Shown here: one piece after another, positions 3,278 to 36,500 of the stretch
Numbering within the stretch: position 1 is the stretch's first letter
How the letters are laid out: every line of letters begins with the position of its first letter
Sequence record: KJ019142.1
Strand: one strand, 5' to 3'
DNA: 64,000 nucleotides
Notes under the pieces: generated by a model
Seen by the model: only the letters and a program-made list of their open reading frames with translations
The model's database searches: none
Told to the model about the DNA's origin: nothing
Translations under genes and position numbers: made by a program

Positions 3278-4179
3278 CAAATAAATCATTGGTTACCGGT
3301 GGCGCGGGTTTCATCGGGTCACATATTGTGGACCGACTTATTACACTAGGACATCAAGTCGTAGTGATTGACAATGAATCCTCTGATGGTCATGATGAAT
3401 ACCATTGGAACAGAAGCGGACAAGTACAAAACCATAAGGCAGACATTCGTGACTACGATGCAATCAAACACTTGTTTGGTGGAGTCAATAATGTTTTTCA
3501 CCTTGCCGCTAAAGCATCAGTACAGGCGTCAGTAGATAACCCCCTACCAACTATTGCCACACAGGTAATGGGAACCGCCAATGTATTGGAGGCAGCACGA
3601 CAATCTGGTGTGAGTAAGTTTGTATATTCCTCTACTAGTGCTTGTTATGGTAACAACAACCCCATTCCTAATGTAGAAACGATGAGAGAAGATCCTCTCA
3701 ACGCCTATGCTATTGGTAAGTTATCTGGGGAACAACTAGTTCGTGCCTATCACTACCTCTATGGTATGAAGACGGTGGCATTCCGTTATACCAATGTGTA
3801 TGGGGAGAGGGCAAGACACGTAGGACACTACGCTCCTGCTGTTAGTAAGTTCCTAAAGATGAGAGCACAGGGAGAACCTCTAACTATCTTTGGTGATGGC
3901 GCCCAACGCCGAGACTTTATTCATGTATCTGATGTAGTCAACGCTAATTGCTGTATTACCTATGAGGAACTAGAGCAGTGGGGTGAGACCTATAACATTG
4001 GTTATGGTAAGAACTGGAGTATCCAAGAGATCGCAGACTCTATCAGTCAGGAACAGATTCACCTATCTGCTCGTACTGGTGAGATGCGTGAGACGCTTGC
4101 TGATATTGGGAAGGCAAAGGCAGAGTTGATGTGGAAACCAAAGACTGACATCATGGATTGGATTAGGGTACAACTCTGA
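3274..4179 (+). CDS. NAD-dependent nucleotide-sugar epimerase/dehydratase
   Basis: GGAGFIG Rossmann motif, YxxxK (YAIGK), RYTNVYG, RDFIHVSD. Confidence 0.9.
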   Translation: MTNKSLVTGGAGFIGSHIVDRLITLGHQVVVIDNESSDGHDEYHWNRSGQVQNHKADIRDYDAIKHLFGGVNNVFHLAAKASVQASVDNPLPTIATQVMGTANVLEAARQSGVSKFVYSSTSACYGNNNPIPNVETMREDPLNAYAIGKLSGEQLVRAYHYLYGMKTVAFRYTNVYGERARHVGHYAPAVSKFLKMRAQGEPLTIFGDGAQRRDFIHVSDVVNANCCITYEELEQWGETYNIGYGKNWSIQEIADSISQEQIHLSARTGEMRETLADIGKAKAELMWKPKTDIMDWIRVQL

Positions 4180-20685: not shown

Positions 20686-21060
20686 ATGAATACATATGGT
20701 TCTCCCGAAGGTTATCTCTTTAACCTTCATACCTGCTCAGCATCAGAAGCGAAGCGAATGTGGAAAGAATCTATAAAGAATGATTGGAAACATAAATGTG
20801 CTTATTGTGGATCAGAACATGAAATTACTTTAGATCATATAGTACCCAAAGCAAAAGGGGGCACTAGTCACACAACCAATATCGTAGCCTGCTGTCGTTC
20901 TTGTAACGCCAGTAAGGCATATGAGGATTGGATTATCTGGTATATTCAACAGCCATTCTTCACTGAAGAGAGGAGGGAGGCTATTGAAAAGTGGATGGAG
21001 AAGGGTCTCCTCAACAATAACTTAGTTGCATATCCACCCAGAAGAAATGTCGTTTATTGA
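20686..21060 (+). CDS. HNH endonuclease (McrA-like, Zn-binding)
   Basis: CAYCG...TLDHIVPKAKGG...NIVACCRSCNASK. Confidence 0.9.
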   Translation: MNTYGSPEGYLFNLHTCSASEAKRMWKESIKNDWKHKCAYCGSEHEITLDHIVPKAKGGTSHTTNIVACCRSCNASKAYEDWIIWYIQQPFFTEERREAIEKWMEKGLLNNNLVAYPPRRNVVY

Positions 21061-21276: not shown

Positions 21277-24200
21277 ATGATCTCAACAGCGACTAAGATT
21301 AAATTTAAAAGGTCTGGTGTAGCCGGACGTAGACCCTCCTTAGCTGATCTTCAGTTAGGTGAATTGGGGATCAATTATAACGATGGTAAACTATTTTTCC
21401 GACAGGAAAATGAAGTAGTTGGCTCTCGTATCATTGAACCTGGACAGGGTGATGTAATCGGTAAGACTATTTTCGTATCCACAAAGGGTAACGATAACAA
21501 TAGTGGTCTTAACGAAAGGGATGCCAAGAGAACTGTTAAAGCGGCCGCCGCAGTAGCAGAACCTGGTGACTCCATCAAACTGTATCCAGGTCAGTACATC
21601 GAAGATAACCCTATCGTATTTAAGGATAGGGTATCTGTAGAGGGTATGGAGCTTCGTAACGTTCTCGTTACTCCAGCCAACCCCAGTAAAGACTTGTATC
21701 AAGTTGGTGAGGCGTTCCACGCTACCAACCATTCCTTTGTGTCCAATAGGGATTCAACAGATGGTGCCTCTATTATCACCTATCGTCCTCTAGAGGGAAC
21801 TGCGTCTGACAGGTATTTTGACGCGGCTAGACTCATCAGGGACAATCTTAGCTTCATTGCTAACGAGACAGTAGGTTTCCTAACCAGTGGATATTCAGGC
21901 TTTGCCGCTGGTCAGAGATCACAGGACGCTGCTCGTGCTCTAGAACTAAACAAGAACTTCATAGTAGAAGAAGCATTTCAATATATCAACTCTCCTGATT
22001 ATACAGGAGCCACATACTTCAACCCAGACCCAGCACAGTGTAAGAGAGACCTAGGAAATATCATTGATGGTTGGAGATATGATCTCATCTCTGATGGTAA
22101 CACCAGATCTACTGGTCTTGGTCTAACCTACTACGCACCTATTCCCTTTGTGAATAGTGCTAATGTTGCTGACCTTGTATACAACAGAAATAACGGTGAT
22201 GTTCTAATTGAAACCGACGTAGATACACAGGTTTCAGTTGGTGAGAAGATCAAACTACAGGATATCAGACTAGAGTGTGGTTCCTACAATAACGACTTCT
22301 TTATCACTGGTTTCAAGTATGATAACACCAGTGGTATTGGAACAGTTAATCTACCCTTTATCCATAACGTCAAGGTTGGAGACCTTGTTAAGTTTGATGG
22401 TTTAGAGTTTGATTGTCCTGCCTATGGTGCCATTGAATATGGTATCCAAGACTTCAAGTATAATGAAACTACTGGTGGAAGTGTTGTCACACTCACCGAA
22501 GATCATGATCTAAAGATTGGTGACACCATTGAACTAAGAGACCTTCAGTTCGATTGTCCCGCCTATGGTGGTGACTTCACTAACATCATCAACCTAGAAT
22601 ACAATAAGACCAGTGGTCAGGGTGTTATCACATATGACAAACCCGCCGATCTCAAGTCTGGTGACGTTGTTATCCTCTATGACCTCACACTAACTTGTGA
22701 TGCTTATGGTAACGCTATCTCAGTTACTGATTTCTCTTATGATAACTTCACTGGTATCACTGAAGTAGAAGTAAATAGACCCCACAACCTCCGTCCCGGA
22801 GACCTAATCAAACTAGAGAACCTTAAGTTCTCTTGTGATTCCTACCTTAATGAAACATACAAGGTCTCTAACTTTGTATATAATGAGAGCACTGGTGATA
22901 GTGTCCTCACCCTAACTGAACCACATAGTTTAGTTGCTGGTAAGAACGTCAGACTTGCTGACCTAGTTTTCTCCTGTAACTCCTATGTTCCAACCGCTAA
23001 AGCAATCTCTGATTTCCAGTATGATGAAGTAGTTGGTATCTCTACTATTACTCTAGCATCTCCACACAACTTATCAGTTGGTGAGCAGTTCAGACTAGAG
23101 GATTTAGTATTCTCCTGTAACTCATATTCCTTCACTGATATTCCTATCATTGATGCACCATATGATAATGTAACTGGTTATGTAACCCTATCGTTCTCTG
23201 GTGACCACGGACAACAGGTTGGTGAGAGAGTAAGACTCAGAGATATTGAGTACTCCTGCCCTGGTGGTTCAGGTATCACTACAACCTTGTTCCCTGATGG
23301 GACCTTTGGTTATGAGTTTGAAATCCTAAGTGTTCCAAACACTAAGAAGATGATTCTTAATGTTGGCACCTCCACTATTGAACACTCCTATGTGAGTGGT
23401 GGTACTGCTACCGTTGGTATTACAACTACTATCTTCCCTGATGGAACACAAGGTTTCGACTTCAATGTATCCAGTGTTAATAGTTCCACTGTTATCGAAG
23501 CAAGTGTTGGTATTTCTACCATCGCTCACAACTATGTTTCTGGTGGATCATTATTCGTTGGTTTCACTACCACAGTATTCCCCGATGGAACACAAGGTGA
23601 TACCTTCAGAGTTAATTCTATCCCTTCTAGCACTCAAATCAGTGTTAATGTTGGTGTATCTTCTATCGCCCATACTTTCGTATCCGGTGGTACAGCAACT
23701 GACCTAGACTCTTTCATCCCTGTATCTGGTTTCACCTACAATGAAGGTGACGGAACTGGACTAGTATCCCTAGACAAGGCACACAACCTAGTGGTTGGTG
23801 ACTCTTTTGTTCTAGAGGATCTTAAGTTCAACTGTAACTCCTACAGAACAGGTGGTACTTCTACTATTGATATCACTAACTTTGAGTATGATAAGGTAAC
23901 CGGACTATCTACAGTCACACTATCTTCTTCACACAACCTACATGTTAATGATACCGTAGCACTATATGATATCAAGTTCTCTTGTCCTGGTGGTTCAGGT
24001 ATTACAACTAATATCTTCCCCGATGGAACCAGAGACAACTTCTATGATGTAGTTGCTGACCTAAACCCCAACCAGATTATTGTTCGGGTTGGTAAGTCTG
24101 ACATTACTCACACATACGCTAGTGGTGGTAGTCTATCCGTTGGTATCACTACTAACATCTTCCCTGATGGAACTAGACCTTCTGGTGACTTCTTCCAGGT

Positions 24201-27200
24201 TATCTCTGTTCCTTCTACCAAGTCTGTTCTAACTCAGGTTGGTCTATCCTCTATCGCTCACTCATACGCAAGTGGTGGTAAGTTCTACACTGGTATCACT
24301 ACTAATGTATTCCCACAGGTATTCACTGACCCCAACATCAAGGTAACCAACGCTGTATATGACGAAGTATCTGGTGTTATCACCATTACTACTAACAAGG
24401 CACACGGACTTACCGCTACCGCACCTGTTCTACTACAGGACCTAAACTTCTCTTGCCTCTCTGGTGGTGTAGGAAACACCCCAGGCAACCTTGTATTCCC
24501 CAGGAACCAGGAAGTTTATGATGTTGTGTCCGTTCTATCTACTACACAATATACGATCAATGTAGGTCCTTCTGACTTCGCTCACGCATATGTTGATGGT
24601 GGTACTTCTACCACACAGAACATCACTAAGGCATCCTACAACAAAGGAACTGGTGATCTAACAGTAACCCTAGACAAGCAACACGGTTATTCAGTTGGTG
24701 ATCGTGCTAGTGTGGTTGATCTCCTCTTCTCCTGTCAGTCTGGTGGTCCTAACAACCAACCTGGAACACTTCTATTCCCCAGACCTACTGATGAGTATGA
24801 AGTTCTATCTGCAAGTGGTAAGACACTCACAGTTAATGTTGGAGCGTTCCCATCACTAGTTCATACCTATAAGAATGGTGGATCACTAACCTATAGTTCT
24901 ACTGTACTTCCTGTAAGTAACGCAGTTTATGATCAATCAACTGGAGTTCTAACACTTACCACATCAATTGCACTAGGGGCACCTGTTGGTTCTACCATTA
25001 AGATGCAGGGTCTAAACTTCTCCTGTGCCTCTGGTGGTCCTGGTAATGACGCTGGTGCTATTGTATTTCCAAGACTAGACACTCCTACCTTCAAGGTGAA
25101 GGAAGTCAAGAGTGGTGTATCCTATGTTATCAATGTAGGAACCTCTACACTCTCACACACATATACATCTGGTGGTTTCTCCTCACTCAAGAAGTTGAAG
25201 AACGACCCCAATATTTTCAAAGTTATCGACACCCCAACACCTAGTAAGGTTATTACTAATGTCGGTGTATCCTCTATCGCTCATGACTATGTGAGTGGTG
25301 GTAATATGTTCGTGGGTATCACCACTAATGTATTCCCTGATGGAACTCGCCCTGATGGAAGTAGGTTCGAAGTTATCTCCGCCCTATCACCCAACCAGGC
25401 ACTCATCAACATCGGTGTTTCTACTATCACCCACAACTACGATAGTGGTGGTAGGATGCAGTATGGTACTACCAATGAGAGACCTGTTCTAGACTTCCTA
25501 TACGATGGTCAGACTGGTATCTCCACTGTAACTATTAGAGGAACTCATGGTTTGAACCAGGGTGACCTAGTGAAACTCAGAGGTCTTGAGTTCGCTTGTA
25601 CTAACTCACCTGGTATTACAACTACTATCTTCCCAGATGGAACTGCCGCTGGTCTCAATATCTACAAGGTTACTGAGATTATTAGTAACAGTACCTTCAA
25701 GACAAATGTAGGTAGAGTTGGATTCGATCATACTTACATCCAAGGTGGTTCCGCTTTCGTTGGTATCACTACTAACATCTTCCCAGATGGAACACAAGGT
25801 TACAACTATACAGTTGCCGCCATTCCTAATAAGAATCAGGTAACAGTTGATGTGGGTATCTCCAGTATCCAACATGATTATATTCGTGGTGGATCACTAT
25901 TCTCTGGTAAGACTAACGAGAGAGATATCGCAGACTTCAAGTATGATCACATCTCTGGTGATGCGGTTCTTACCTTCAGAAAGGCACAGAACTTATTCAC
26001 ACAAGATCTAGTAAAACTTAAGAACCTTCAGTTTGATTGTCCAAACTCTACTGGTATCACTACTACTCTCTTCCCAGACGGAACCAGAAGTAACCTCTTC
26101 CTAATCAAGGAGAGACTAAACCCAACACAGTTCAAACTCAATGTTGGCACTTCACCATTCGGTCATGACTATGTGAGAGGAACAGGTCAGGCATTCGTTG
26201 GTATCACTACTAACATCTTCCCTGATACCAAGACACAACCAAGTAAGTTATTCAAGGTTGTTGATGTCCCAACTCCTACTACTATCTCCGCCAAGATTGG
26301 TGTATCCACTATCTCCCACTCATATGTTAAGGGTGGTAAGGTATTCGTTGGTATTAACACTGATATCTTCCCTGGAGATGAGCAAGTATCACCACTAGGT
26401 GACACATATACAGTTCAGAGTATCACCAAAGATGGTGAGTTGGTTATCAATGTTGGACTATCTTCTATCAGTCACTCTTATGGTGGCGGTGGTAAGGTTC
26501 TATATGGACAGAGTTCTGGTAACAACCTACAACATATCACTGGTCCTGGTGTCCTAGATGCAACCATCGCCGCTGTGGACTTCGAGAAACAGGTAGCAAT
26601 CAACGCACTAAACAACAGACCTTGGGGTTCATTCGTTCCTGAAGAGACTGCTGTTGTGGAGGCGTTCGCCTATGATAACCAGACTGGTTTCGGAACAGTA
26701 ACTGCTAGAGGAATCAACGTCAACACTGGTGACACCATCAGAATGAGTGACATTCAGTTTGTTTGTTCTGAGGAGTACGCCGGTGTAACCACTACCTTCT
26801 TCCCTGATAATACTAGACCAGAGGGTCAGTACTTTAGAGTAGAAAGAAGAATCAACATCGATGAGTTTGAAGTTAATATTGGTGTTTCTACTATCAAACA
26901 CGTATTCAACTACGAAACAGGTGGTAACGTATATCGTTACAGACAGTCTATTCTAGATGTTAACTACGATAGATCCAGTGGTATCACTAGTATCCGAGCA
27001 ACCAAGCATGGTTACAAGGCGAAAGATATCGTGGAACTAGGTGATATCGAGTTCGATTGCCCCGTATTCAAACCTCAATATGATATTGAGAACTTTGTTT
27101 ATGATAACACAACTGGTCTATCCACAGTTACTACTACTGTAGATAACACCATCAAGGTAGGTGACAATGTAAAACTAGCAGACATCAAACTAGAGTGTCC

Positions 27201-30200
27201 TCCATATGGTAACCAGAGAGTTATTGATAACTTTGTTTATGATAATAAGAGTGGTCTTTCCACCATATCACTAACAGCAGCACACGGACTCAACCTAAGA
27301 CCTAGACCTTCTGTTTCTATCTCTACCGCCCTCTATGATAACCAGACTGGTATCCTAACCGTTACCACCAATGCTGACATCAACTTCACCGATAGAAGTG
27401 GTCAGGGTGTTCAACTCAGTGGTCTAAGGTTCTCCTGTGACTCCGCTGGTTTCCCTGGAACTCTCACCTACCCTGAAGAGAATCTAGTTTATGATATCCT
27501 AGAGATTCAGTCTCCTAGTAAGTTTAAGATTAATGTTGGTCTCTCCACTATCGCTCACGAGTATGTGAATGGTGGTGCCGCTACTAAGGTTGATAGATTC
27601 GATGTGAAACTACAGGGTATCAAGTTTGATTGTCCCGCCTATGGAAACACAATCGATGTTACTAACTTCCTATACGATCAGAGAAGTGGTAACTCACTAG
27701 TTACCGTAGATAAGGCACACAAACTATCTGTTGGTGATAACATCAAACTAGCGGATCTCAAGTTCCAATGTGCTCCATATGGTAACGATTACAATGTTCT
27801 AAACGCAGATTACGACAACACAACTGGTATTATTACAGTAACCACTAACCAAAACATCAACGGTGTTGGTGTTGGTGATACTATTCGCCTCTCCAGACTA
27901 CAGTTTGATTGTGTAGGTAGTGGTCCTGAGTATAATATCACTAACGTATTCTTCAATACTGGTAACAGATCAGTTATTCTCACAGTTCCCGAAAGACCAA
28001 TTGGTCTAAACCCAGGTGATGACATTAAACTAACCAATATGTCATACCTAGAAGGTGGTAGTGGTAATGTAGTTGCGTATCCAGATGGAAGAGATTCAAG
28101 TCTAAACATCTTCCGTATCAATGATGTTCAACCTAACTCCATTCTCCCTGGATACTTCGATGTAACCACAGCGTTCCCCAATGTTAAGGATCCTTTCGCG
28201 ATCTTCAACAATACTGGTAGACTAACCACTGGTATTACTACTAACATCTACCCTGAGAATGTAGGTGCTGAAGGTGGTTTCTATGAAGTTATCCGCCTAA
28301 GACAAGATAACCAGTTTGAGATTCAGGTAGGAACCTCTACTATCACTCACAACTATGTGAGACAAGGACAGATGTTTACTGGTGTAACCACCAACTTCTT
28401 CCCTGGTAACCTACAGAACTCACCTAGAGGAAACATCTTTGAGATTGTGGAAGTTCCCACAGCAACACAGGTGAGAATCAATGTAGGTGTATCTTCTATC
28501 TCTCATAGTTATGATAGTGGTGGTCAGATGTTTGTTGGTATTACTACTAACATCTTCCCTGATGGAACCAGAGGTAACCTATTCCCAGTTGTTGGAGTGG
28601 CAAATACTCTCACCCTAAGAATCGACGCGGGTGTATCCAGTATCCCCCACAACTATGTTTCTGGTGGAGAACTATTCGTAGGTATTACAACTAATATCTT
28701 CCCTGGTAACTCACAGAACTCACCAAGAGGTAGTATCTTCAAGGTTCTATCTAAGGATAACGAGTGTGGTGCTGATAGATTCACTATCAATGTTGGTGTA
28801 TCTTCCATCACTCACGGTTATGTTGAGGGTGGAACAGTAACCACTGGTGTTACAACTAACAAGTTCCCTGATGGAACACACGGATTCAAGTTCCCTGTTA
28901 TCGATGTTCTAGATGACAACTACTTCACCGTGAATGTTGGTACTTCTACTATCACTCACAACTATATCTCTGGTGGTTTCACTAGAAGACTTGAAGTTCC
29001 TATCAATAGTTTCGTATATGATAGAGTTTCTGGTCTATCCACAGTGGGTATCCAAAGTCACAGAATGAATATCGGTGACCTTGTGAAACTTCGTGATGTG
29101 AAGTTCAACTGTGATCCATATGGTGGAGAAAAGACTATCTCTGGTGTTGTTTATGATAATACCTCTGGTAGAATGACCGTTAACACCACTGGTTCTCATA
29201 GTCTAAACATCAATGATGTTGTGAAACTCTCCAATATTCAGTTGGATTGTTCCCCATATGGTAACGAGAGAACTATTACCGCCGCCACCTACAACAGAAA
29301 CAATGGAAACCTAAGTGTTCAGGTATCTGAACCTCACAACCTCAAGATTAGTGAGAATGTGAAACTTAAAGGTTTGGAGTTCTCCTGTTCCTCAGAACAC
29401 GCAGGTGTGACAACAACAATCTTCCCAGATTCAACCGCACCTTCTCTAAACATCTACGCTATTGAGAGTATCACCAACTCCACAACCTTCATGGTTAATG
29501 TTGGAACCTCTACTATCAGTCACAACTATGTTTCTGGTGGTTCCGCTTTCGTAGGTATCACAACTAACATCTTCCCAGGTGATAGCCAGAACTCCCCCAG
29601 AGGTTCTTTCCTCAGTGTGGTAGATATCCCAGCATCAGACGCCTTCGTGGTGAATGTAGGGGTTTCTACTATCTCTCACGGGTATGTTAGAGGTGGATTG
29701 GTTCAGACAGGTATTACAACTGATGTATTCCCTGATGGAACACAGAGTGATTTCTTCAAGATTGAAGATGTCCCTAGTAATAATACAGTTGTAATCAACG
29801 CAGGTATCTCTTCTATCATCCACAGATACAACTCTGGTGGTTTCGCCGCCAAGTATGTTACCTATCAGTCCAATAACTCACAACTACTTGATAGTTCTGT
29901 TATTAGAGTGAGTGGTGATTGTATGGCAGTTGGTGAGAGAGTTGAAGAACTCGCAGGTATTGTTACCTCCATCATCAAGAATGGTCCTTCAATCGCACCT
30001 GGTGGTATTCCAGTAGATGTGGTAAGTGCATCCTACGACCAGTCTGGTGGAGCACTATCAGTCACAGTCAAAGACGCAATTGACCTCACACCAACTAACA
30101 TAGTTAGAATCGAAGGTCTTATCTTCGAGTGTGAGTCCTCTGGTGTAACAAACACTCGTGTATATCCTGACAATAAGGTATTCAACTATGAGGTTCTATC

Positions 30201-33180
30201 AGTTCAGTCTCCAACAACCTTCACTATCAATGTAGGTTCTCAGGCAGATATCCCACACACATATGTGAATGGTGGAACTGTAAGACCAGGTAACAAGTTT
30301 GATGTGGCAACCGCAACCTACAATACTGAAAATGGTATTGTTAGAGTTACTACCACTGAAGATAACTACTTGGTTCTTGGTAGAGGAGTTAACCTACAGG
30401 GTCTAAACTTCTCCTGTACCTCTGGTGGTCCTAACAACAAACCTGGAACACTAACCTTCCCCGACAAAACACCAACCAATGTAACCGCCGCCACATATGA
30501 TAGTGTGACTGGTGTATTACGTATCACAACCAACAGACCTCACCAAGCATACAAGGACGCGTTTGTATCCCTAAACGGACTAACCTTCACTTGTGATCCA
30601 GGTGGTCCTCTAGTATTCCCTAGAAACCCTGATACTAAGTCCTTCAGAGTTACTAAGAGAGTTGATGACTACACATATGAGTGTCAGTTGGCACCGACCA
30701 ATAAGGTTCATACTTATCTAAGTGGTGGTACTTCCTCCACAGGAAACGGAAACTTCAGAGTTTCTCGTCTCATTGATACAAAGACCTTCGAAGTCACAAT
30801 GGTTCCTCTAGATCTACCACATACCTATGTAAATGGTGGTTCCGCCGCTAGTGTATTCACTAGACAGATCATTGATGGAATCAACATCAACACTAGGAAG
30901 TGTGCTAGAGACGTTAGACGTATCTACCTCGCAGTGGCACACGATATCACTCGTGGTGGTAACTGGAAGTGTGTTGAAGGAGCGAAACTCTACTACGATA
31001 ACGTGGGTCAAACCAAGTTTATCTCTGGTGGTGAAGTAAATCAAACCGTTGAGGCACTTGACTTCTCCCTAAACATTGTTAGATGTTTAATCAACAACGT
31101 AACATGGGGTGGAGTTCCAAGAGGATATCTCACTAAGGGTGAGAGAAGTGAACTAAGAATTCCATCTTCAGCTAAGACTTCAGTGGTTGGTTTCAGACAA
31201 CAACTACTTTCCAACCAATACACTACTCAGAAGAAGAGTATTTCTGGTATGGTATACGATAACCTTACGGGTATCGCAACCGTCACCACTAAACTCTCAC
31301 ATGAACTCATCAAGTATGATGGTATTCAACTCTCAGATATTGAGATGAGATGTACTGGTAGTCCAAGGATTACCACCAATGTATTCCCTGATGGAACACA
31401 AGGTGAGATCTTTGAGGTTATGGAAACTCTAGATGATAGAGTAGCATACATCGTAACTGACGCGTCATACACCAACACCACTGGTAAGTTGGTAGTAACA
31501 ACAACAGGAAACAATGATATTCCTGTTGGATCAAGAGCAAAACTAGATGGTTTACTCTGGACTTGTTCATACGATCCTTCAAAACAACTTAAGTTCCCAG
31601 AGAACAGGAAGTTCCGTTATGAGGTTATCGCAAAACCAGATGGTACAACACTAGAGTTCAATGTTGGTATCTCTACGATTCCACACACATTTGTTCCAGC
31701 TCCTATAGATGTTGAATACACAGTCAAGGAGGATCCAGTTAAGTTTAAGGTTCATGTTGGTACAGTTTCCTTCCCACACACCTACTTCGGTGGTGGAACA
31801 GTATGGCACAAACTACCATTCACTCCACCTTTCACCCAAACACAGATCAAGGACGTATCACAACAGAAAGATCCAGTCCAGTTCTCTAACAATACTCCTA
31901 ACGGATGTGCTAATGTATTCTCCGCTATCAGTAATTGTATTGGTGTTGTTACTAGTATCGTAGCAAATGGATTAGAAGGATCAGGTATCTCCACAACTTA
32001 TCCAGGTAATGATGGTAAAGGTGTTCCAACTATGGATGAGATGCCTTCACAGGGTGTTGGTAACATTATCAAAGGTCCATACATCAGAAACTGTACGAAC
32101 TTCGTTCCCAAGTCTATTGGTATGAGAATGGATGGTTTCGACGCGGAACCTGGTGATGAAATCTCCAATGGTGTTCAAGGTTCATCTAACGTTGACTCCT
32201 TCACCCAGTTCAACCCTGGTGGTGTTGGTTGTTCCATCTCTAACGGAACCTACCAACAGTTGGTTTCTATCTTCACTATCTGTTGTGACGAAGCAATCGT
32301 ATGTGACTCTGGAGCACAACTCGACCTCACTAACTCCAACTCTTCCTTCGGTAGATTGGGTCTAGTCGCAAGAGGTATTGGTGACAAACTCTCCAAGTGT
32401 ATCGATAGATATACTGGTATCGTCGCCAAAGAGGCATCAATCGAAGATGACCTAGTTGTTGTGAAGGGTATTGGTGATAAGAGACCCTACGATGGTCAGG
32501 GTATTTTCTTCGGAGAACTCTTCAGGGATGTGGTTAGTATCGAAGTTCTGGACGGTGGTTCAGGTTACAACGATGATATTCCACCTAACGCGTTTGTCGC
32601 AGAACCTACTGGTCCCGCTGGTATTAAGGCGGAAGTTTCACCAACAGTCAGAGATGGTGTTGTTGTTTCTATCGAGGTTATCGCAAATGGTAACCAATAC
32701 AGAGAGAAATTCCCTGAGGTTGTAATATCACCTCCTAAGAGTCCTCTTGGTAGAACCGCAAAAGCAAGGGCAATTACCGAACCTCTCTACTATAATGTAG
32801 AAAGTTCTTCCCCACCTGAAGAGGGTACAACTAGTATCATTTTCAAACAGCGTCTAAATAATACCGTATCGGTAGGCACAACTGTATTCTTCTCTAGATT
32901 AAGTCTACAGATTGCCTCCTCTCACTCCTTCGAATACATTGGTGCTGGTAACAGCATTAACGGAGCAAGACCTTCTGAAGGTGGAGTTCCAATTAAGGAA
33001 AATGAGATCGTGAAGGAAGACGGTGGTTCAATTGTCTATACCTCCACTGACCAGGCAGGTAACTTTAACATTGGTGACGATTTCGTTATCAACCAGTTCA
33101 CTGGTACTATCACTGGTAGATCGTTCGATCAATCAGTCCTAAATAAAGTTACTCCACTCATCATCGCCCTAGACAGTTAA
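21277..33180 (+). CDS. giant virion structural/fibre-like protein with nested beta-domain repeats (3967 aa)
   Basis: N-terminal KIKFKRS...LGELGINYNDGKLF fibre-type module, FVSTKGNDNNSG, about 31 repeats, helical repeats; late promoter. Confidence 0.85.
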   Translation: MISTATKIKFKRSGVAGRRPSLADLQLGELGINYNDGKLFFRQENEVVGSRIIEPGQGDVIGKTIFVSTKGNDNNSGLNERDAKRTVKAAAAVAEPGDSIKLYPGQYIEDNPIVFKDRVSVEGMELRNVLVTPANPSKDLYQVGEAFHATNHSFVSNRDSTDGASIITYRPLEGTASDRYFDAARLIRDNLSFIANETVGFLTSGYSGFAAGQRSQDAARALELNKNFIVEEAFQYINSPDYTGATYFNPDPAQCKRDLGNIIDGWRYDLISDGNTRSTGLGLTYYAPIPFVNSANVADLVYNRNNGDVLIETDVDTQVSVGEKIKLQDIRLECGSYNNDFFITGFKYDNTSGIGTVNLPFIHNVKVGDLVKFDGLEFDCPAYGAIEYGIQDFKYNETTGGSVVTLTEDHDLKIGDTIELRDLQFDCPAYGGDFTNIINLEYNKTSGQGVITYDKPADLKSGDVVILYDLTLTCDAYGNAISVTDFSYDNFTGITEVEVNRPHNLRPGDLIKLENLKFSCDSYLNETYKVSNFVYNESTGDSVLTLTEPHSLVAGKNVRLADLVFSCNSYVPTAKAISDFQYDEVVGISTITLASPHNLSVGEQFRLEDLVFSCNSYSFTDIPIIDAPYDNVTGYVTLSFSGDHGQQVGERVRLRDIEYSCPGGSGITTTLFPDGTFGYEFEILSVPNTKKMILNVGTSTIEHSYVSGGTATVGITTTIFPDGTQGFDFNVSSVNSSTVIEASVGISTIAHNYVSGGSLFVGFTTTVFPDGTQGDTFRVNSIPSSTQISVNVGVSSIAHTFVSGGTATDLDSFIPVSGFTYNEGDGTGLVSLDKAHNLVVGDSFVLEDLKFNCNSYRTGGTSTIDITNFEYDKVTGLSTVTLSSSHNLHVNDTVALYDIKFSCPGGSGITTNIFPDGTRDNFYDVVADLNPNQIIVRVGKSDITHTYASGGSLSVGITTNIFPDGTRPSGDFFQVISVPSTKSVLTQVGLSSIAHSYASGGKFYTGITTNVFPQVFTDPNIKVTNAVYDEVSGVITITTNKAHGLTATAPVLLQDLNFSCLSGGVGNTPGNLVFPRNQEVYDVVSVLSTTQYTINVGPSDFAHAYVDGGTSTTQNITKASYNKGTGDLTVTLDKQHGYSVGDRASVVDLLFSCQSGGPNNQPGTLLFPRPTDEYEVLSASGKTLTVNVGAFPSLVHTYKNGGSLTYSSTVLPVSNAVYDQSTGVLTLTTSIALGAPVGSTIKMQGLNFSCASGGPGNDAGAIVFPRLDTPTFKVKEVKSGVSYVINVGTSTLSHTYTSGGFSSLKKLKNDPNIFKVIDTPTPSKVITNVGVSSIAHDYVSGGNMFVGITTNVFPDGTRPDGSRFEVISALSPNQALINIGVSTITHNYDSGGRMQYGTTNERPVLDFLYDGQTGISTVTIRGTHGLNQGDLVKLRGLEFACTNSPGITTTIFPDGTAAGLNIYKVTEIISNSTFKTNVGRVGFDHTYIQGGSAFVGITTNIFPDGTQGYNYTVAAIPNKNQVTVDVGISSIQHDYIRGGSLFSGKTNERDIADFKYDHISGDAVLTFRKAQNLFTQDLVKLKNLQFDCPNSTGITTTLFPDGTRSNLFLIKERLNPTQFKLNVGTSPFGHDYVRGTGQAFVGITTNIFPDTKTQPSKLFKVVDVPTPTTISAKIGVSTISHSYVKGGKVFVGINTDIFPGDEQVSPLGDTYTVQSITKDGELVINVGLSSISHSYGGGGKVLYGQSSGNNLQHITGPGVLDATIAAVDFEKQVAINALNNRPWGSFVPEETAVVEAFAYDNQTGFGTVTARGINVNTGDTIRMSDIQFVCSEEYAGVTTTFFPDNTRPEGQYFRVERRINIDEFEVNIGVSTIKHVFNYETGGNVYRYRQSILDVNYDRSSGITSIRATKHGYKAKDIVELGDIEFDCPVFKPQYDIENFVYDNTTGLSTVTTTVDNTIKVGDNVKLADIKLECPPYGNQRVIDNFVYDNKSGLSTISLTAAHGLNLRPRPSVSISTALYDNQTGILTVTTNADINFTDRSGQGVQLSGLRFSCDSAGFPGTLTYPEENLVYDILEIQSPSKFKINVGLSTIAHEYVNGGAATKVDRFDVKLQGIKFDCPAYGNTIDVTNFLYDQRSGNSLVTVDKAHKLSVGDNIKLADLKFQCAPYGNDYNVLNADYDNTTGIITVTTNQNINGVGVGDTIRLSRLQFDCVGSGPEYNITNVFFNTGNRSVILTVPERPIGLNPGDDIKLTNMSYLEGGSGNVVAYPDGRDSSLNIFRINDVQPNSILPGYFDVTTAFPNVKDPFAIFNNTGRLTTGITTNIYPENVGAEGGFYEVIRLRQDNQFEIQVGTSTITHNYVRQGQMFTGVTTNFFPGNLQNSPRGNIFEIVEVPTATQVRINVGVSSISHSYDSGGQMFVGITTNIFPDGTRGNLFPVVGVANTLTLRIDAGVSSIPHNYVSGGELFVGITTNIFPGNSQNSPRGSIFKVLSKDNECGADRFTINVGVSSITHGYVEGGTVTTGVTTNKFPDGTHGFKFPVIDVLDDNYFTVNVGTSTITHNYISGGFTRRLEVPINSFVYDRVSGLSTVGIQSHRMNIGDLVKLRDVKFNCDPYGGEKTISGVVYDNTSGRMTVNTTGSHSLNINDVVKLSNIQLDCSPYGNERTITAATYNRNNGNLSVQVSEPHNLKISENVKLKGLEFSCSSEHAGVTTTIFPDSTAPSLNIYAIESITNSTTFMVNVGTSTISHNYVSGGSAFVGITTNIFPGDSQNSPRGSFLSVVDIPASDAFVVNVGVSTISHGYVRGGLVQTGITTDVFPDGTQSDFFKIEDVPSNNTVVINAGISSIIHRYNSGGFAAKYVTYQSNNSQLLDSSVIRVSGDCMAVGERVEELAGIVTSIIKNGPSIAPGGIPVDVVSASYDQSGGALSVTVKDAIDLTPTNIVRIEGLIFECESSGVTNTRVYPDNKVFNYEVLSVQSPTTFTINVGSQADIPHTYVNGGTVRPGNKFDVATATYNTENGIVRVTTTEDNYLVLGRGVNLQGLNFSCTSGGPNNKPGTLTFPDKTPTNVTAATYDSVTGVLRITTNRPHQAYKDAFVSLNGLTFTCDPGGPLVFPRNPDTKSFRVTKRVDDYTYECQLAPTNKVHTYLSGGTSSTGNGNFRVSRLIDTKTFEVTMVPLDLPHTYVNGGSAASVFTRQIIDGININTRKCARDVRRIYLAVAHDITRGGNWKCVEGAKLYYDNVGQTKFISGGEVNQTVEALDFSLNIVRCLINNVTWGGVPRGYLTKGERSELRIPSSAKTSVVGFRQQLLSNQYTTQKKSISGMVYDNLTGIATVTTKLSHELIKYDGIQLSDIEMRCTGSPRITTNVFPDGTQGEIFEVMETLDDRVAYIVTDASYTNTTGKLVVTTTGNNDIPVGSRAKLDGLLWTCSYDPSKQLKFPENRKFRYEVIAKPDGTTLEFNVGISTIPHTFVPAPIDVEYTVKEDPVKFKVHVGTVSFPHTYFGGGTVWHKLPFTPPFTQTQIKDVSQQKDPVQFSNNTPNGCANVFSAISNCIGVVTSIVANGLEGSGISTTYPGNDGKGVPTMDEMPSQGVGNIIKGPYIRNCTNFVPKSIGMRMDGFDAEPGDEISNGVQGSSNVDSFTQFNPGGVGCSISNGTYQQLVSIFTICCDEAIVCDSGAQLDLTNSNSSFGRLGLVARGIGDKLSKCIDRYTGIVAKEASIEDDLVVVKGIGDKRPYDGQGIFFGELFRDVVSIEVLDGGSGYNDDIPPNAFVAEPTGPAGIKAEVSPTVRDGVVVSIEVIANGNQYREKFPEVVISPPKSPLGRTAKARAITEPLYYNVESSSPPEEGTTSIIFKQRLNNTVSVGTTVFFSRLSLQIASSHSFEYIGAGNSINGARPSEGGVPIKENEIVKEDGGSIVYTSTDQAGNFNIGDDFVINQFTGTITGRSFDQSVLNKVTPLIIALDS

Positions 33181-33184
33181 GATC

Positions 33185-33535
33185 ATGGCAGCAGTTGCTT
33201 TAAATACGTTCAAAACGGTCAGGCATTTAGTTTCTGATTCCAATGTGGGGATTTATACATCCCCCATTGGTGTTGCCTCTATTGTCCTATACGCTCAGGC
33301 GACACACGTTGCGAACGATGAAAGTGTATATTTCATTAACTTTTCACATGCTCGTCCCGACGAGGATCCTGTGCAGTTTGAAATCATTAAGGATGGTCCA
33401 GTTATCCCTAATGACGCACTAAACCTATTAACAGGTAGATTAGTTCTCGAAACTGGAGACGAACTTAGAGTATCAGGAAATACGACCGGAGATGTGAAGG
33501 TTGTTGTTTCTATTCTAGAGACTGCAAAGTCTTAA
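33185..33535 (+). CDS. small structural-cluster protein
   Basis: 116 aa, beta-rich, between giant genes. Confidence 0.7.
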   Translation: MAAVALNTFKTVRHLVSDSNVGIYTSPIGVASIVLYAQATHVANDESVYFINFSHARPDEDPVQFEIIKDGPVIPNDALNLLTGRLVLETGDELRVSGNTTGDVKVVVSILETAKS

Positions 33536-33567: not shown

Positions 33568-36500
33568 ATGCCTCTAAATTATCTTACCGGAAGAGTAAGT
33601 AGATTACAAGTTGGATTTCCAGGGTTTTCAACAGCAAAGGACCTTACAGTTGATGTAGCAGGTGCCATTGGTATTGATACCCAAAACCCAAGAGCAGCTG
33701 CCGACTTCCCAGATGTCAGTATCCGTGGTGATATTGTTGACTCTGTTGGATTTACCGGTGGTATTGGGTATTTTCTAGCGCAAGATGTTCAGGGTGTTCG
33801 GTGGGTAGAGGCTCCACCTATCAACTCTAATGCCATCTTAGTGTTAGACAATGGAGTTATCGTTGGTGCTGGATCATTCATTGGTCTAAACTTTGACTCT
33901 GGTAAGGATGAGGACTTCCTCTCGGTTGTTCCTGACCCACTAAACCCACAGATTGCAAAGATTGCATATGATGTTCGTTGGGTAAGATATAATTACGGTA
34001 ATAATAAAGGTATCTCCACAGGTTTTGGAGATAATGGTGACTACTCCTCTATCCCTGGTTATGGAACCACAGAGGCAGTTGGTGTTACCTCAGTTGGTAT
34101 TGGTACTAACCAACCACTAGATGACTTCCAAGTTGGTATTGGATCTACTGGTGTTACTATCAACGGACCTCTAGGTCTAGTTGATGCAGAAATTATTAAA
34201 GCAAAATCAATCTCGGTTGAAGGAAACCTAGAGGTTGAATCACTTATTGTTAGACCTGGTGTTGCCACTCTAACCACTCTAGATGTATTGAACGAGGCGT
34301 TCATACCAGTAGAGTATGTTGGTTTCTCCAGCATTCAAGATGCAAATATTGATGCTCTCTTTGCTAATCAGTTACTAGCAGGTATTACTACCCTAGGTTT
34401 CGGTGGTGAAGATGTATTCATCCTCAACGACTTATATGTTCAGGGTGGTTTAGGTACCTTCGATGGCGACGTATTCGTTGGTGGAGACCTAACTGTTAAG
34501 GGTGAGACGTTCTTCAACCAGATTAACGCAGTCAACTTATCAGTATCTGGTATTGCCACTATCGTCCAAGCGGAGATAGCTGTTGGTTTAGTTACCGATC
34601 TAAAAGTATCTGGTTTCTCTACACTATCAGATTTCTCATTCAACATTGGTGTTGGTACATACCTAGAACTAGAAGATCTAGATGTATCTGGTGTTGGTAG
34701 TTTTGGTGTTGTCAACTCTGGTGATATTAATGTTAGTGGTGGTTTAACCGCTAGTGAGATTGATGCAGATAAGGGATACATTGGTATTCTCACAGCAGAC
34801 TCTATTGTATCTGGTGCAGGTACTATTGGTTCTATCGAGTCTGATGGGAACCTAACAACACTTAATGATATTATTGTTGGTGGTGCTTCAACCTTCGTTG
34901 GTTTGGGTACTTTCCAAGACGATCTCTTTGTTGGTGGTGACCTCTTTGTTAGAGGTGATGTTACCTTTAAGAATATTAATGGTGAACAACTACTAATCAG
35001 TGGTATTGGTACCATCAAGGAACTAGTCTTTGATAGTGGTATTGGAACCTCACTAGAAGTGAGAGATCAGATTACGACTGGTATATCTACGATCAATGAA
35101 GCAGATATTCAAGATGCCGCTGTTGAGAGACTCACTGTTGGTGATGCAGAGATCATCGGTATCGCAACTATTACCGAGATTGATGTAGATAGAGGTAGAG
35201 TTGGTATCCTAACTGGTACAGACCTCTCCTATGCTGGTATCGGTACTATCACGGAGATTGATGTTGACCAGGGTAGAGTTGGTCTAGTCACTGGTGACAC
35301 ACTACTATACTACGAACAGTCTAGGATCAATAGAGTTACCTTCTTTGATAACTACCTATCAGTTAATCAGAGTCTAAGAGTTTCTGGTCTCTCCACCTTT
35401 GTTGGAACAGGTACATTCTTCAATGACTTGTATGTTGGTGGTGACCTATATGTTGCTGGTGAACTAAACTTCAAACAACTCAATGGTGAGAACCTATACC
35501 TAACTGGTGTTGGTACCATCTATGATCTACGTAACACCGTTGGTTTCATCACCAACCTATTTGTAGAAGAGTCTGTAACTGGTTTAGCAACCATCAGTAG
35601 TCTAGTTGGTTCTTCCGCTACCATCACAGACTTCACTGGACAGTCACTACTCATCCAGAATCCATTCAACCCAATGCCTTTGGATCCAACTGGGATCCCA
35701 GGACAGGGTGTTATTGATAGTCTCCTAGTTAGAAACCTAACTTCTTCTAACAACATTCTAGCCAATGACATTGATGCCAACTTCGTTGACACCGATGATC
35801 TAAAGGCTGGTGTTGGTACTATCACTGACCTAGAGTGGACTACCGCTGTTGGTGATGACACTACTACCAATACTCTACAGGTTACTGATACAGCAACCAT
35901 TAACATCATCGATGCCAATCAGATCGATGCCGAAGATGCTAATATTGGAGTTGCCACCCTCTCTAGTCTCCTAGTAACTGGTGTCACTACCTTCAAGGGT
36001 CAGGTTGATATTGAGGATATTGAGTTCGTTGACCAGAGTGTCACCGGTATTTCCTCTATCAACATCCTCAAGTTCAATGTTGGTTATGGAACCTACCTAG
36101 AGGTTACTGACTCAGTAACTGGTGTTGGAACTATTGGTCTTGCCAGTATCACAACCGCTCAGGTATCTTTCCTAGATGTAAGAGATGAGGTAGTTGGGGC
36201 ATCCACTATTGGTGTTCTATCAGTAACTGAAGGATTTGCAGTATCTGGTTTCTCCACCTTTGTTGGTTTCACTACCTATAAAGGAGATGTATTTGTTGAT
36301 GGTAACTTAACTGTTACTGGTTTCGTTAGTTTCACACAACTAAACGCTGATCAATCACAGATTGGTATCCTAACTGTATTCGATGCGTTAGACGCCAGAA
36401 CTGGTGTTGGTACATTCAAACACCTAGAGACAGTAGATAGTGCAGTTCTATCGGGTGTATCTACCATTGGACTCACAACCTTCAAGAATGGTGATGTTAA

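What the first reader, a model, noticed from the sequence alone, without database searches (positions are those of the whole stretch)
22165..31815. Matryoshka protein: domain halves nested like balanced parentheses
Seen: the repeat has an A half (xxxYDxxTGxxTxTxxxxHxLxxGDxVKLxxLxFxC) and a B half (GITTxxFPDGTxGxxFxV...NVGxSxIxHxYxxGG). In places A and B are adjacent, but elsewhere they nest. Block 1 (about 22165-26520) reads A x8, B x3, A x2, B x2, one B split by three complete AB units, B, A, B, B, A, B, B, B: 12 opens and 12 closes. Block 2 (about 26650-29865) has one AB, then 5 opens (one split by a complete unit) around a central unit with 5 closes, then 3 opens and 3 closes. Blocks 3 and 4 have complete units inserted inside B halves. 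That gives about 31 domains, and every block balances exactly. Inference: recursive domain-in-domain insertion into a loop of a beta-barrel (FCCH-like) domain, giving a branched or hairpin-stalk virion appendage whose domains close in last-in-first-out order. I know of no description of nesting this deep.
Basis: partly seen in the sequence, partly recalled or inferred. Interest (0 to 1): 0.9.

Follow-up and report, generated by a model that had tools for sequence, protein, structure and literature searches.

The report
Phage fibre protein of nested barrels
One 3,967-residue tail-fibre-like protein of a marine cyanophage holds 31 small beta-barrel domains inserted into one another up to eight levels deep, which appears to be the deepest natural case of a rare architecture previously described in cyanobacterial RNA polymerase.

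Summary
The region is the repeat core of one intact ORF (21277-33180, +, 3,967 aa; "hypothetical protein" of Synechococcus phage ACG-2014f).

Five results support last-in-first-out (LIFO) pairing:
- About 150 close homologues, carrying 0 to 34 units, are all balanced and differ only by balanced sets.
- Unit-free 738-754 aa homologues match the protein with its repeat core removed.
- A/B covariation is highest under LIFO pairing; it is the best of all 120 pairings in the five-deep nest.
- An invariant Cys in A and an invariant His in B are lost together in LIFO partners (770 both, 20 neither, 1 mismatch).
- In AlphaFold2, removing the last B abolishes only the third strand of the first A.

One unit resembles the six-stranded E1 FCCH barrel. 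The flanks match phage tail-fibre families.

The closest known case is the Si3 insert of cyanobacterial RNA polymerase, with 8 domains and "six-level" nesting. This is therefore a new, more extreme variant of a known kind. No contact map or experimental structure was available.

The parts
21277..33180 (+). Whole gene: intact 3,967-aa ORF (AIX41338.1, 'hypothetical protein', Synechococcus phage ACG-2014f)
   Evidence: PHROG matches are phrog_3442 and phrog_17885 'tail fiber protein'.
21277..21426 (+). N-terminal ~50 aa motif shared with phage tail-fibre N-termini (probable attachment end)
   Evidence: aa 5-48 match the N-termini of phrog_35830, 20242, 19966 and 1699 (tail fibre and long tail fibre distal subunit families).
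21454..21771 (+). N-terminal part of a probable right-handed beta-helix (aa 60-165)
   Evidence: Pfam DUF1565, E = 0.003, below cut-off. phrog_9851 profile positions 318-420.
21784..22164 (+). Helical segment, copy 1 (aa 170-296), immediately before block 1
   Evidence: Aligns to aa 5-252 of the unit-free homologue P0110. phrog_4527 positions 1158-1236.
22165..26496 (+). Block 1 (aa 297-1740): 15 domains, nesting depth 8. One B half (aa 1005-1022 plus 1307-1343) is split by three complete units (aa 1023-1300).
   Evidence: HMM parse. Short orthologues lack exactly a balanced eight-domain subset of this block.
26497..26655 (+). Linker 1 (aa 1741-1793), non-repeat, at nesting depth 0
26656..29844 (+). 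Block 2 (aa 1794-2856): 11 domains. It holds one AB unit; a five-deep nest around a divergent central unit (aa 2221-2310, lacking Cys and His), with one A half (aa 1983-2008 plus 2109-2122) split by a complete unit; and then AAABBB.
   Evidence: Covariation ranks LIFO first of 120 pairings. AF2 models of aa 2571-2862 and aa 2571-2809.
29845..30018 (+). Linker 2 (aa 2857-2914), non-repeat, at depth 0
30019..30843 (+). Block 3 (aa 2915-3189): 3 domains. One AB unit, then a unit whose B half is split by a complete unit.
   Evidence: In S-CAM7 the orthologue of unit 2915/2955 is itself interrupted at the A|B junction by an extra unit.
30844..31239 (+). Linker 3 (aa 3190-3321): helical segment, copy 2
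   Evidence: aa 3207-3279 align to aa 219-290 of the unit-free P0110. phrog_4527 positions 1198-1270.
31240..31800 (+). Block 4 (aa 3322-3508): 2 domains, with a complete unit inside a B half
   Evidence: The single unit of the S-T4 orthologue aligns to the inner unit here.
31801..33177 (+). C-terminal region (aa 3509-3967). It contains the beta-helix C-part (aa 3538-3703, nt 31888-32385) and a C-terminal domain shared with tail-fibre and baseplate families.
   Evidence: phrog_17885 positions 630-1001, E = 9.5e-123; phrog_9851 positions 466-630. tblastn hits are annotated 'tail fiber protein' or 'putative major tail protein' in other cyanophages.

Best explanation
The gene encodes a tail-fibre-like structural protein. 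Its roughly 750-aa host scaffold consists of an N-terminal fibre motif, a beta-helix, a helical segment and a C-terminal domain. Into this scaffold 31 copies of one ~87-aa six-stranded FCCH-like beta-barrel have been inserted.

Each barrel is made from half A (strands 1-3, ending in an invariant Cys) and half B (a GITTxxFPDGT loop plus strands 4-6, with an invariant His). New barrels sit mostly in the loop between A and B of an older barrel, and occasionally in a loop inside A or inside B. The chain therefore runs outward through successive A halves and returns through the matching B halves in last-in-first-out order.

The inferred result is four tree-like projections, the largest eight domains deep with side branches. 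Neighbouring domains would be joined by two antiparallel connections, and both chain ends of every branch would return to the scaffold.

What is shown:
- the balanced grammar;
- its conservation, and indels that are always balanced sets;
- the existence of the empty scaffold and of 1-34-unit versions;
- LIFO-specific covariation, including Cys/His co-loss;
- the FCCH-like fold of one unit.

What is inferred:
- the physical contacts between distant halves;
- rod-like or branched geometry;
- presence in the virion, and a role in host-surface contact or reach.
For: Grammar:
- The parse is balanced.
- 29 orthologues at 45-59% identity keep it. They differ only by a<ABa> versus a<AABBa>, AB versus AABB, AABB versus AAABBB, three versus four inserted AB units, and presence or absence of a balanced eight-domain set.

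Host scaffold:
- A spliced query of aa 1-296 plus 3509-3967 finds natural 738-754 aa proteins covering 99% of it at 46-48% identity.
- It also finds a series: none (22), AB, ABAB, ABABAB, ABAABB, ABABAABB, ABABAb<ABb>.
- The syntenic S-T4 gene (836 aa) has exactly one unit.

Pairing of the 15 non-adjacent pairs across 30 orthologues:
- Inter-half mutual information under LIFO exceeds all 500 random pairings (z = 4.3 and 7.6).
- LIFO is best of all 120 pairings in the five-nest. A cross-validated model picks the LIFO partner for 5 of 5.
- In block 1, permutations reaching the LIFO value numbered 2, 11, 23 and 0 of 600.
- The couplings are interpretable: A35 Gln with B43 Arg in exactly three LIFO pairs; A17 aromatic with B28 Ala; small A17 with Phe/Tyr at B28; A30 Glu with B15 aromatic.
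- Cys at A38 and His at B39: 770 both, 20 neither, 1 mismatch. The loss patterns in P0027 and P0028 fit LIFO and not first-in-first-out order.
- A and B distance matrices are congruent (r = 0.36, 5 of 5000 permutations).

Structure:
- AF2 of AAABBB has pLDDT 76.7 and 3+3 strands per unit.
- Removing B3 abolishes only strand 32-42 of A1.
- Foldseek finds the E1 FCCH domain 2v31 (prob 1.00, TMt 0.56) and Uba1.
- A BFVD paralogue model matches at TMq 0.63.

Function:
- PHROG tail-fibre families match both flanks.
- Neighbouring genes match baseplate wedge families.
Against: - Model coordinates and contact maps were not available, so no A-B contact was seen directly.
- In the truncated AF2 model the pLDDT of the orphan A1 stayed at about 80-87. 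Only its strand assignment changed.
- A coupling model trained only on adjacent units had no power to pick partners.
- Cross-validated support in block 1 was weak: rank 1932 of 40320, and worse without the junction columns.
- Foldseek E-values to PDB are weak (0.05), and no Pfam model reaches its threshold.
- Among 86 distant cluster representatives, the automated parse was balanced in only 47. One of the others was checked and the cause was weak B detection.
- The Cys/His co-loss events come from a few related orthologues, so independent events are few (about 7 slots).
- Virion location, oligomeric state and function rest on family names only.
Confidence: 0.85

Rival explanations
1. The halves complement each other between chains. 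The protein is an oligomeric fibre, for example a parallel trimer, in which A halves of one chain close barrels with B halves of a neighbouring chain (domain swapping). Nesting would then describe register, not intrachain hairpins.
For: Phage tail fibres are commonly trimeric and intertwined (general knowledge). The grammar, the covariation and the Cys/His co-loss would all be satisfied equally by in-register swapping. The flanks match tail-fibre families.
Against: A monomer AF2 model of AAABBB is reasonably confident (pLDDT 76.7), and it responds to deletion of B3 as intrachain pairing predicts. FCCH barrels in E1 enzymes and in phage tail tube proteins are monomeric domains (PMC13576161). 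No oligomer prediction could be run.
Confidence: 0.08
2. A and B are two independent repeat modules that fold on their own. Their equal numbers and order reflect duplication history of AB cassettes rather than physical pairing of distant halves.
For: A runs and B runs look like ordinary tandem arrays. The orphan A1 keeps high pLDDT in the truncated AF2 model. The adjacent-trained coupling model did not recover partners.
Against: - Contiguous duplication cannot produce AABB or AAABBB from AB.
- All roughly 150 close homologues are balanced, and long linkers occur only at depth 0.
- Residue-level compensation occurs between halves hundreds of residues apart, and Cys/His are lost together only under LIFO pairing.
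- An A+B unit matches a single-domain barrel.
- In S-CAM7 the orthologue of a contiguous unit is split by an inserted unit.
Confidence: 0.04
3. The nests form one continuous two-layer beta structure, a long hairpin sandwich or solenoid with an A layer facing a B layer, rather than discrete barrels joined by double linkers.
For: The AF2 model has long terminal strands (11-13 residues) at the A-to-A and B-to-B transitions. LIFO covariation is equally compatible with this arrangement.
Against: Foldseek recognises a discrete FCCH barrel (prob 1.00). Single, isolated units exist in homologues such as the S-T4 protein. Units can also sit inside loops of A or of B, which suits autonomous domains.
Confidence: 0.05

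Closest known systems
Si3 insertion of the cyanobacterial RNA polymerase beta' subunit (sandwich-barrel hybrid motifs, SBHM)
   Same: Copies of one small beta-rich domain are inserted into one another recursively. Several domains are therefore built from distant chain segments, and the whole forms an elongated (150 A) appendage whose two chain ends return to the host loop. It has been solved by X-ray and cryo-EM (PMC10895346). A survey of 2.7 million domains describes it as a six-level nested architecture with branching nodes (PMC13114784).
   Different: - Different fold: FCCH-like here, with no RNA polymerase among the top 50 Foldseek PDB hits.
- Different host protein: a phage fibre scaffold rather than the trigger loop.
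- Much larger: 31 domains in this protein and up to about 34 in homologues, against 8.
- Deeper: 8 levels against up to 6.
- A natural series from 0 to 34 units exists at one locus.
E1 FCCH domain (Pfam PF16190; PDB 2v31), and FCCH-type decoration domains of siphophage tail tube proteins
   Same: [quoted passage not shown] It has already been seen on the outside of phage tails (PMC13576161). Matches here are Foldseek prob 1.00 with TMt 0.56 and a sub-threshold full-length Pfam hit in a homologue.
   Different: No Pfam hit reaches threshold. The sequence motifs differ (YDxxTG...FxC and GITTxxFPDGT...HxYxxGG). There is no link to ubiquitin activation. Known FCCH domains are single and are not nested in copies of themselves.
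Cyanophage tail-fibre family phrog_17885, with the unnamed 740-1300 aa homologues (for example S-T4 gp074, 'putative major tail protein')
   Same: Same N-terminal and C-terminal regions (E = 5e-110 and 9.5e-123). Same genomic position, after psbD and talC and before a small conserved ORF and giant baseplate genes.
   Different: Those proteins carry 0-4 units, mostly side by side. This one carries 31 units, mostly nested.

Membership tests
E1 FCCH-like beta-barrel (Pfam PF16190, PDB 2v31) | [quoted passage not shown] | tested here: met
   AF2 gives three strands per A and three per B. Foldseek matches 2v31 at prob 1.00 and TMt 0.56 over 120 columns, and Uba1 chains at prob 0.8-0.93. This holds at fold level only and on a predicted model.
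E1 FCCH-like beta-barrel (Pfam PF16190, PDB 2v31) | Sequence match to the Pfam E1_FCCH model above its gathering score | tested here: not met
   No hit in the window protein or in its 13 adjacent units. The best hit in a homologue is 18.7 bits against a cut-off of 29.5. Precomputed PF16190 hits exist for only 3 of 79 homologues.
Recursive same-fold domain insertion (type case: cyanobacterial RNA polymerase Si3) | Domains of one family interrupted by complete copies of the same family, repeatedly, with chain segments pairing last-in-first-out | tested here: met
   Balanced grammar. Balanced indels and an empty scaffold. LIFO covariation and Cys/His co-loss. AF2 truncation test. No experimental structure.
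Recursive same-fold domain insertion (type case: cyanobacterial RNA polymerase Si3) | SBHM fold and location in the RNA polymerase trigger loop | tested here: not met
   The fold matches FCCH. No RNA polymerase chain appears among the top 50 PDB matches. The host is a phage fibre-like protein.
Phage tail fibre (phrog_17885 and related) | Conserved N-terminal and C-terminal regions of the family | tested here: met
   aa 1-296 match profile positions 1-238 (E = 5.3e-110). aa 3591-3966 match positions 630-1001 (E = 9.5e-123).
Phage tail fibre (phrog_17885 and related) | Presence in the virion, and a role in adsorption | not testable with these tools
   The only support is annotation names of homologues and a neighbourhood of baseplate wedge genes.
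Right-handed beta-helix (DUF1565 / pectate-lyase-like) | Match to the family model; contiguous beta-helix in relatives | tested here: inconclusive
   DUF1565 scores 17.4 bits against a cut-off of 20.3, at aa 70-126. In phrog_9851 the segments matching aa 63-164 and aa 3538-3703 lie only 46 profile positions apart. No structure was predicted for this part.

The most novel reading that the evidence does not exclude
This may be the deepest and largest natural example of recursive self-insertion of a protein domain: 8 levels and 31-34 barrels, against 6 levels and 8 domains in the previous record holder.

It comes with a ready-made evolutionary series of 0, 1, 2, 3 ... 34 units at one cyanophage locus. 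Each barrel appears to be clasped by a co-evolving Cys-His pair contributed by its two halves.

If so, folding must run last-in-first-out. The first A half would wait about 1,350 residues (A aa 297-337; B aa 1691-1739) for its partner. That implies either an unusual co-translational folding pathway or a dedicated helper, possibly the small conserved ORF just downstream. Growth of the array would also require an insertion mechanism other than ordinary tandem duplication.
Probability: 0.5. Interest if true: 0.9.

Novelty: new variant of a known kind. Interest (0 to 1): 0.78.

Why it matters
Nested domain insertion is usually one level deep. The record reported in a survey of 2.7 million classified domains is six levels, in one enzyme (PMC13114784). 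As far as I know, such surveys under-sample very long viral proteins.

This phage protein shows that the principle can be applied recursively to build a structure of more than 3,000 residues. It offers several things to work with:
- **An evolutionary series.** Homologues carry from zero to 34 units, which allows study of how such architectures arise and grow.
- **A folding test.** N-terminal halves must wait for partners made much later, so the protein is a stringent case for co-translational folding.
- **A design idea.** Doubly connected links could give stiff, branched protein rods.
- **A practical warning.** Cutting giant proteins into arbitrary pieces for structure prediction, as BFVD did for this protein, severs the partners and gives unreliable models.

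For phage biology, the protein points to an unusual, highly variable fibre in abundant marine cyanophages.

Tried and rejected
- **The search for related loci on viral contigs** with block 2 as a single protein found no relatives. MSA rows were therefore pasted from the hits of the search for homologous proteins.
- **Sequence searches** of the whole protein, of an AB-unit profile and of the unit-free homologue against PDB found nothing meaningful.
- **Pfam** on the whole protein and on 13 units gave only chance-level hits.
- **A coupling model trained only on adjacent AB units** failed to identify distant partners (z = 0.7). Its strongest couplings were junction columns, which encode context rather than contact. 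It was replaced by permutation tests on mutual information and by leave-one-nest-out models.
- **Using pLDDT of an orphan A half as a readout** did not discriminate. The DSSP strand assignment did.
- **Scan of all other window ORFs** with the A and B HMMs gave no hits. The three neighbouring giant genes do not carry this repeat.
- **Automated grammar test on 145 distant cluster representatives** was only partly usable, because B halves diverge faster than A halves and many entries are fragments.
- **Was the extra unit in S-CAM7 a recent copy of its host unit?** No. Its nearest relatives are at most 48% identical and lie elsewhere in the protein. No recent duplication event could be reconstructed.
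- **Literature searches** for nested domains in cyanophage or tail-fibre proteins found no description of this protein.
Full report
**What the region is.** The finding lies inside one intact ORF, 21277-33180 on the + strand, encoding 3,967 aa. The window is part of Synechococcus phage ACG-2014f, a T4-like cyanomyovirus of the family Kyanoviridae. The gene is annotated "hypothetical protein" and is at least 99% identical in 43 deposited genomes. It lies downstream of psbA, psbD and talC. Downstream of it come a small conserved ORF and then three giant genes matching baseplate wedge families.

**Check of the observation.** I built separate HMMs for half A (41 positions: xxxYDxxTGxxTVTxxxxHxLxxGDxVxLxxLxFxC) and half B (45-48 positions: GITTxxFPDGTxGxxFxVxxVxxxxxFxVNVGxSxIxHxYxxGG). 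I parsed the protein with them and again with HMMs refined on orthologues. Writing A as "(" and B as ")", the order is:
- Block 1 (aa 297-1740): A x8, B x3, A x2, B x2, then a B half split into aa 1005-1022 and aa 1307-1343 by three complete AB units, then B, A, B, B, A, B, B, B.
- Block 2 (aa 1794-2856): AB; then A, A, an A half split into aa 1983-2008 and aa 2109-2122 by one complete unit, A, A, a divergent central unit (aa 2221-2310), B x5; then AAABBB.
- Block 3 (aa 2915-3189): AB; then A followed by a B half split by a complete unit.
- Block 4 (aa 3322-3508): A followed by a B half split by a complete unit.

There are 31 A and 31 B, giving 31 domains. Every block is a balanced bracket string, and the maximum depth is 8, in block 1.

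The domain tree of block 1 is as follows. D1[297|1691] contains D2[343|1641]. D2 contains D3[390|1495] and D15[1551|1592]. D3 contains D4[437|1346] and D14[1404|1445]. D4 contains D5[483|1005+1308]. D5 contains the chain D6[530|761] > D7[577|713] > D8[624|665], the chain D9[816|955] > D10[866|907], and three units inside its B half.

Crude nulls put equal counts plus bracket order in all four blocks at about 1e-6. The three long non-repeat linkers all fall at depth-0 junctions (6 of 61 junctions), which has probability 5.6e-4.

**Test on homologues: are halves gained and lost in matched sets?** A search with block 2 returned 79 large homologues. Twenty-nine of them are orthologues at 45-59% identity and 3,003-4,318 aa long, including S-CAM7 gp208. 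All keep the balanced order. Their differences are all balanced:
- The unit inside the split A is AB or AABB.
- Block 3 begins with AB or AABB and continues with AABB or AAABBB.
- The split B of block 1 holds three or four AB units.
- Five short orthologues have block 1 as A5 B2 A B2 A B3. That is our block 1 minus a contiguous, balanced eight-domain set inside the fifth domain.

In S-CAM7 the orthologue of our contiguous unit 2915/2955 is itself interrupted at its A|B junction by a further complete unit. More distant giant proteins of 4,500-5,500 aa show strings such as A6B6, A5B5 and A8..B8.

**The host scaffold.** PHROG comparison of the flanks showed that aa 1-296 and aa 3591-3966 match the two ends of a 1,002-position "tail fiber protein" family, phrog_17885. 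It also showed that aa 63-164 and aa 3538-3703 match positions 318-420 and 466-630 of another fibre family, phrog_9851. Those two segments are nearly adjacent there.

I therefore searched with aa 1-296 spliced to aa 3509-3967. Natural proteins of 738-754 aa align over 99% of this spliced query at 46-48% identity in a single local alignment. Among the best 120 hits the parse gives:

| Units parsed | Number of proteins |
|---|---|
| none | 22 |
| AB | 4 |
| ABAB | 26 |
| ABABAB | 55 |
| ABAABB | 3 |
| ABABAABB | 1 |
| ABABA + B half split by AB | 2 |

None of the full-length entries is unbalanced.

The syntenic gene of Synechococcus phage S-T4 is gp074, 836 aa, annotated "putative major tail protein". 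It has the same neighbours and exactly one AB unit, at aa 292-377.

The repeat core is therefore an insertion, or rather a series of insertions, into a scaffold of about 745 aa. That scaffold consists of an N-terminal fibre motif, a probable beta-helix (DUF1565, E = 0.003, below threshold), a helical segment and a C-terminal domain. The helical segment is present twice in our protein, at aa ~250-286 and at aa 3207-3279. Blocks 1-3 lie between the two copies.

**Test of pairing by covariation.** For the 15 domains whose halves are not adjacent, I extracted both halves from 30 orthologues in HMM register.
- Inter-half mutual information under LIFO pairing exceeded all 500 random pairings. Total MI gave z = 4.3, and the top-30 APC-corrected pairs gave z = 7.6.
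- Permuting only within a nest controls for phylogeny and for position. In the five-deep nest of block 2, LIFO was the best of all 120 pairings on four measures.
- For the eight outer pairs of block 1, the permutations reaching the LIFO value numbered 2, 11, 23 and 0 of 600.
- A leave-one-nest-out log-odds model chose the LIFO partner for 5 of 5 A halves in the five-nest. It was weak for block 1, at rank 1932 of 40320.
- A model trained on adjacent units alone had no power, because its top couplings were junction columns.

The couplings are chemically interpretable:
- A35 Gln pairs with B43 Arg in exactly the three LIFO pairs 390/1495, 2174/2318 and 2621/2759. Chance is 0.002. The adjacent unit 1794/1835 shows the same pairing.
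- The only A half with Phe/Tyr at A17 (aa 437) pairs with the only B half with Ala at B28 (aa 1346). Thr/Ser at A17 goes with Phe/Tyr at B28, in nested and adjacent units alike.
- A30 Glu goes with an aromatic residue at B15.
- A29 Phe goes with B30 Thr.

The distance matrices of A halves and of B halves are congruent under LIFO: r = 0.36, reached by 5 of 5000 permutations. For the outer pairs only, r = 0.45, reached by 13 of 5000.

**The Cys-His pair.** The invariant Cys at the end of A (column 38) and the invariant His in B (column 39) are lost together. Over 791 LIFO pair instances, 770 have both, 20 have neither, 1 has Cys only and none has His only.
- Replacements are often paired, for example Tyr/Tyr, Tyr/Phe and Thr/Arg.
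- Co-loss occurs in three non-adjacent pairs: 2174/2318, 1983/2420 and 1892/2523.
- In P0027 and P0028 the pattern of loss along the five-nest fits LIFO and not first-in-first-out pairing. A direct parse of those proteins confirms this.
- The divergent central unit of block 2 lacks both residues.

The number of independent events is small, about seven slots in a few related orthologues. Even so, this is the signature of two residues that work together across the two halves. Whether they bind a metal or simply pack against each other is unknown.

**Structure prediction.**
- AF2 of aa 2571-2862 (AAABBB), with a 30-sequence orthologue alignment, gave mean pLDDT 76.7 and pTM 0.52. Each A and each B has three strands.
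- Foldseek against PDB found the first catalytic cysteine half-domain (FCCH) of mouse E1, 2v31, at prob 1.00 and TMt 0.56, plus many Uba1 chains at prob 0.8-0.93. E-values are weak, at about 0.05.
- FCCH is a six-stranded closed barrel already known as an outward-facing decoration on siphophage tail tubes (PMC13576161).
- Against BFVD, a paralogue from the same phage matched over the whole query (TMq 0.63), and one hit is a phage protein named as containing an FCCH domain.
- A unit of homologue P0083 hits Pfam E1_FCCH over the whole profile, but below threshold.

The same alignment cut after B2 (A1 A2 A3 B1 B2) was predicted. All strands of A2, A3, B1 and B2 were unchanged. Strand 32-42, the third strand of A1, disappeared, and the other two strands of A1 shortened slightly. 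LIFO pairing predicts exactly this, because A1 has lost B3. First-in-first-out pairing or independent folding does not. The pLDDT of A1 stayed high, so the evidence is the strand assignment, not the confidence.

**Most likely working.** The protein is a fibre-like structural protein. Its scaffold carries four tree-like arrays of FCCH-like barrels. Most insertions are in the loop between strands 3 and 4 (the A|B junction). A few are in a loop inside A (between HMM columns 24 and 29) or inside B.
- Because each guest domain enters and leaves through the same host loop, neighbouring domains are joined by two antiparallel connections.
- Both ends of every branch return to the scaffold.
- This should give stiffer, branched projections than beads on a string.
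- It also means barrels can close only from the inside out as the chain is made. The first A half (aa 297-337) must wait for a partner at aa 1691-1739.

These geometric and folding consequences are inferences. The role in host contact rests on family names and on gene neighbourhood.

**Rivals.**
- In-register complementation between chains of an oligomeric fibre would satisfy all the sequence evidence and cannot be excluded here.
- Independent A and B modules are disfavoured by every test.
- A continuous two-layer sheet rather than discrete barrels is disfavoured by the FCCH match and by isolated single units in homologues.

**Comparison with what is known.** Recursive insertion of one domain family into itself is documented for the Si3 insert of cyanobacterial RNA polymerase. 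Si3 has eight SBHM domains, four of them discontinuous, and forms a 150 A rod solved experimentally (PMC10895346). A 2026 survey of 2.7 million domains describes it as a six-level nested architecture and as its most complex case (PMC13114784).

The present protein works the same way but differs in four respects:
- the fold is FCCH-like rather than SBHM;
- the host is a phage fibre scaffold;
- it has about four times as many domains;
- it is deeper.

I found no description of it in the searchable literature. No Pfam or PDB sequence relative exists. The unit occurs in 586 clusters at 50% identity among 1.84 billion representatives.

An automated grammar check on 86 flanked distant representatives was balanced in 47. 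The rest mostly showed an excess of A. In the one case I inspected, P0257, this was because divergent B halves scored below threshold.

**Verdict.** This is a new and more extreme variant of a known but rare architecture.

Noticed in passing
window 33185-33535 (+): A 116-aa ORF lies directly downstream of the giant gene and is conserved in the same position in phage S-T4 (gp073). It matches positions 1-113 of phrog_1276, a family whose later positions (93-168) match A-B units of the giant protein. In some phages, therefore, this small protein appears to be fused to units. It may be an assembly or folding partner.
   Followed up: partly
window 20686-21060 (+): An HNH endonuclease ORF of 124 aa (phrog_2214, E = 1e-37) sits immediately upstream of the giant gene. 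It may be a mobile element beside a highly variable structural locus.
   Followed up: no
window 33568-39174, 39246-46802, 46861-52731 (+): Three further giant ORFs (1,868, 2,518 and 1,956 aa) match baseplate wedge families. The last two share the same PHROG families in the same order (phrog_1469, 13163, 8215), so they look like paralogues. None carries the A/B repeat.
   Followed up: partly
window 27937-28206 (aa 2221-2310): The unit at the apex of the five-deep nest is strongly divergent in all orthologues and lacks both the invariant Cys and the invariant His. As the most distal domain of that branch, it could be a specialised tip.
   Followed up: partly
window 22024-22134 and 30895-31113 (aa ~250-286 and 3207-3279): The helical scaffold segment (motif CxRDxxxIxxAxxxDxxxGGN...YY) occurs twice, once before block 1 and once before block 4. 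Unit-free homologues have it once. The scaffold itself was therefore partly duplicated.
   Followed up: partly
BFVD entries A0A0E3G4F4_1 to _3 (same protein): The public predicted-structure set holds this protein cut into three arbitrary pieces of about 1,322 aa. The cuts separate A halves from their B partners, so those models are likely to be unreliable for the outer domains.
   Followed up: no
elsewhere in the ACG-2014f genome (BFVD A0A0E3G2L9, A0A0E3G351): At least two other proteins of the same phage carry the same domain: one of about 2,574 aa and a 1,436-aa 'tail fiber-like protein'. The first matches the AAABBB model over its whole length (TMq 0.63). Neither is in this window.
   Followed up: no
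window 373-20607: This stretch holds host-derived auxiliary genes (psbA, psbD, two hli genes, ferredoxin, talC, heptose epimerase, glycosyltransferase) and a separate 771-aa tail fibre gene at 6547-8862, as annotated in the GenBank record.
   Followed up: no
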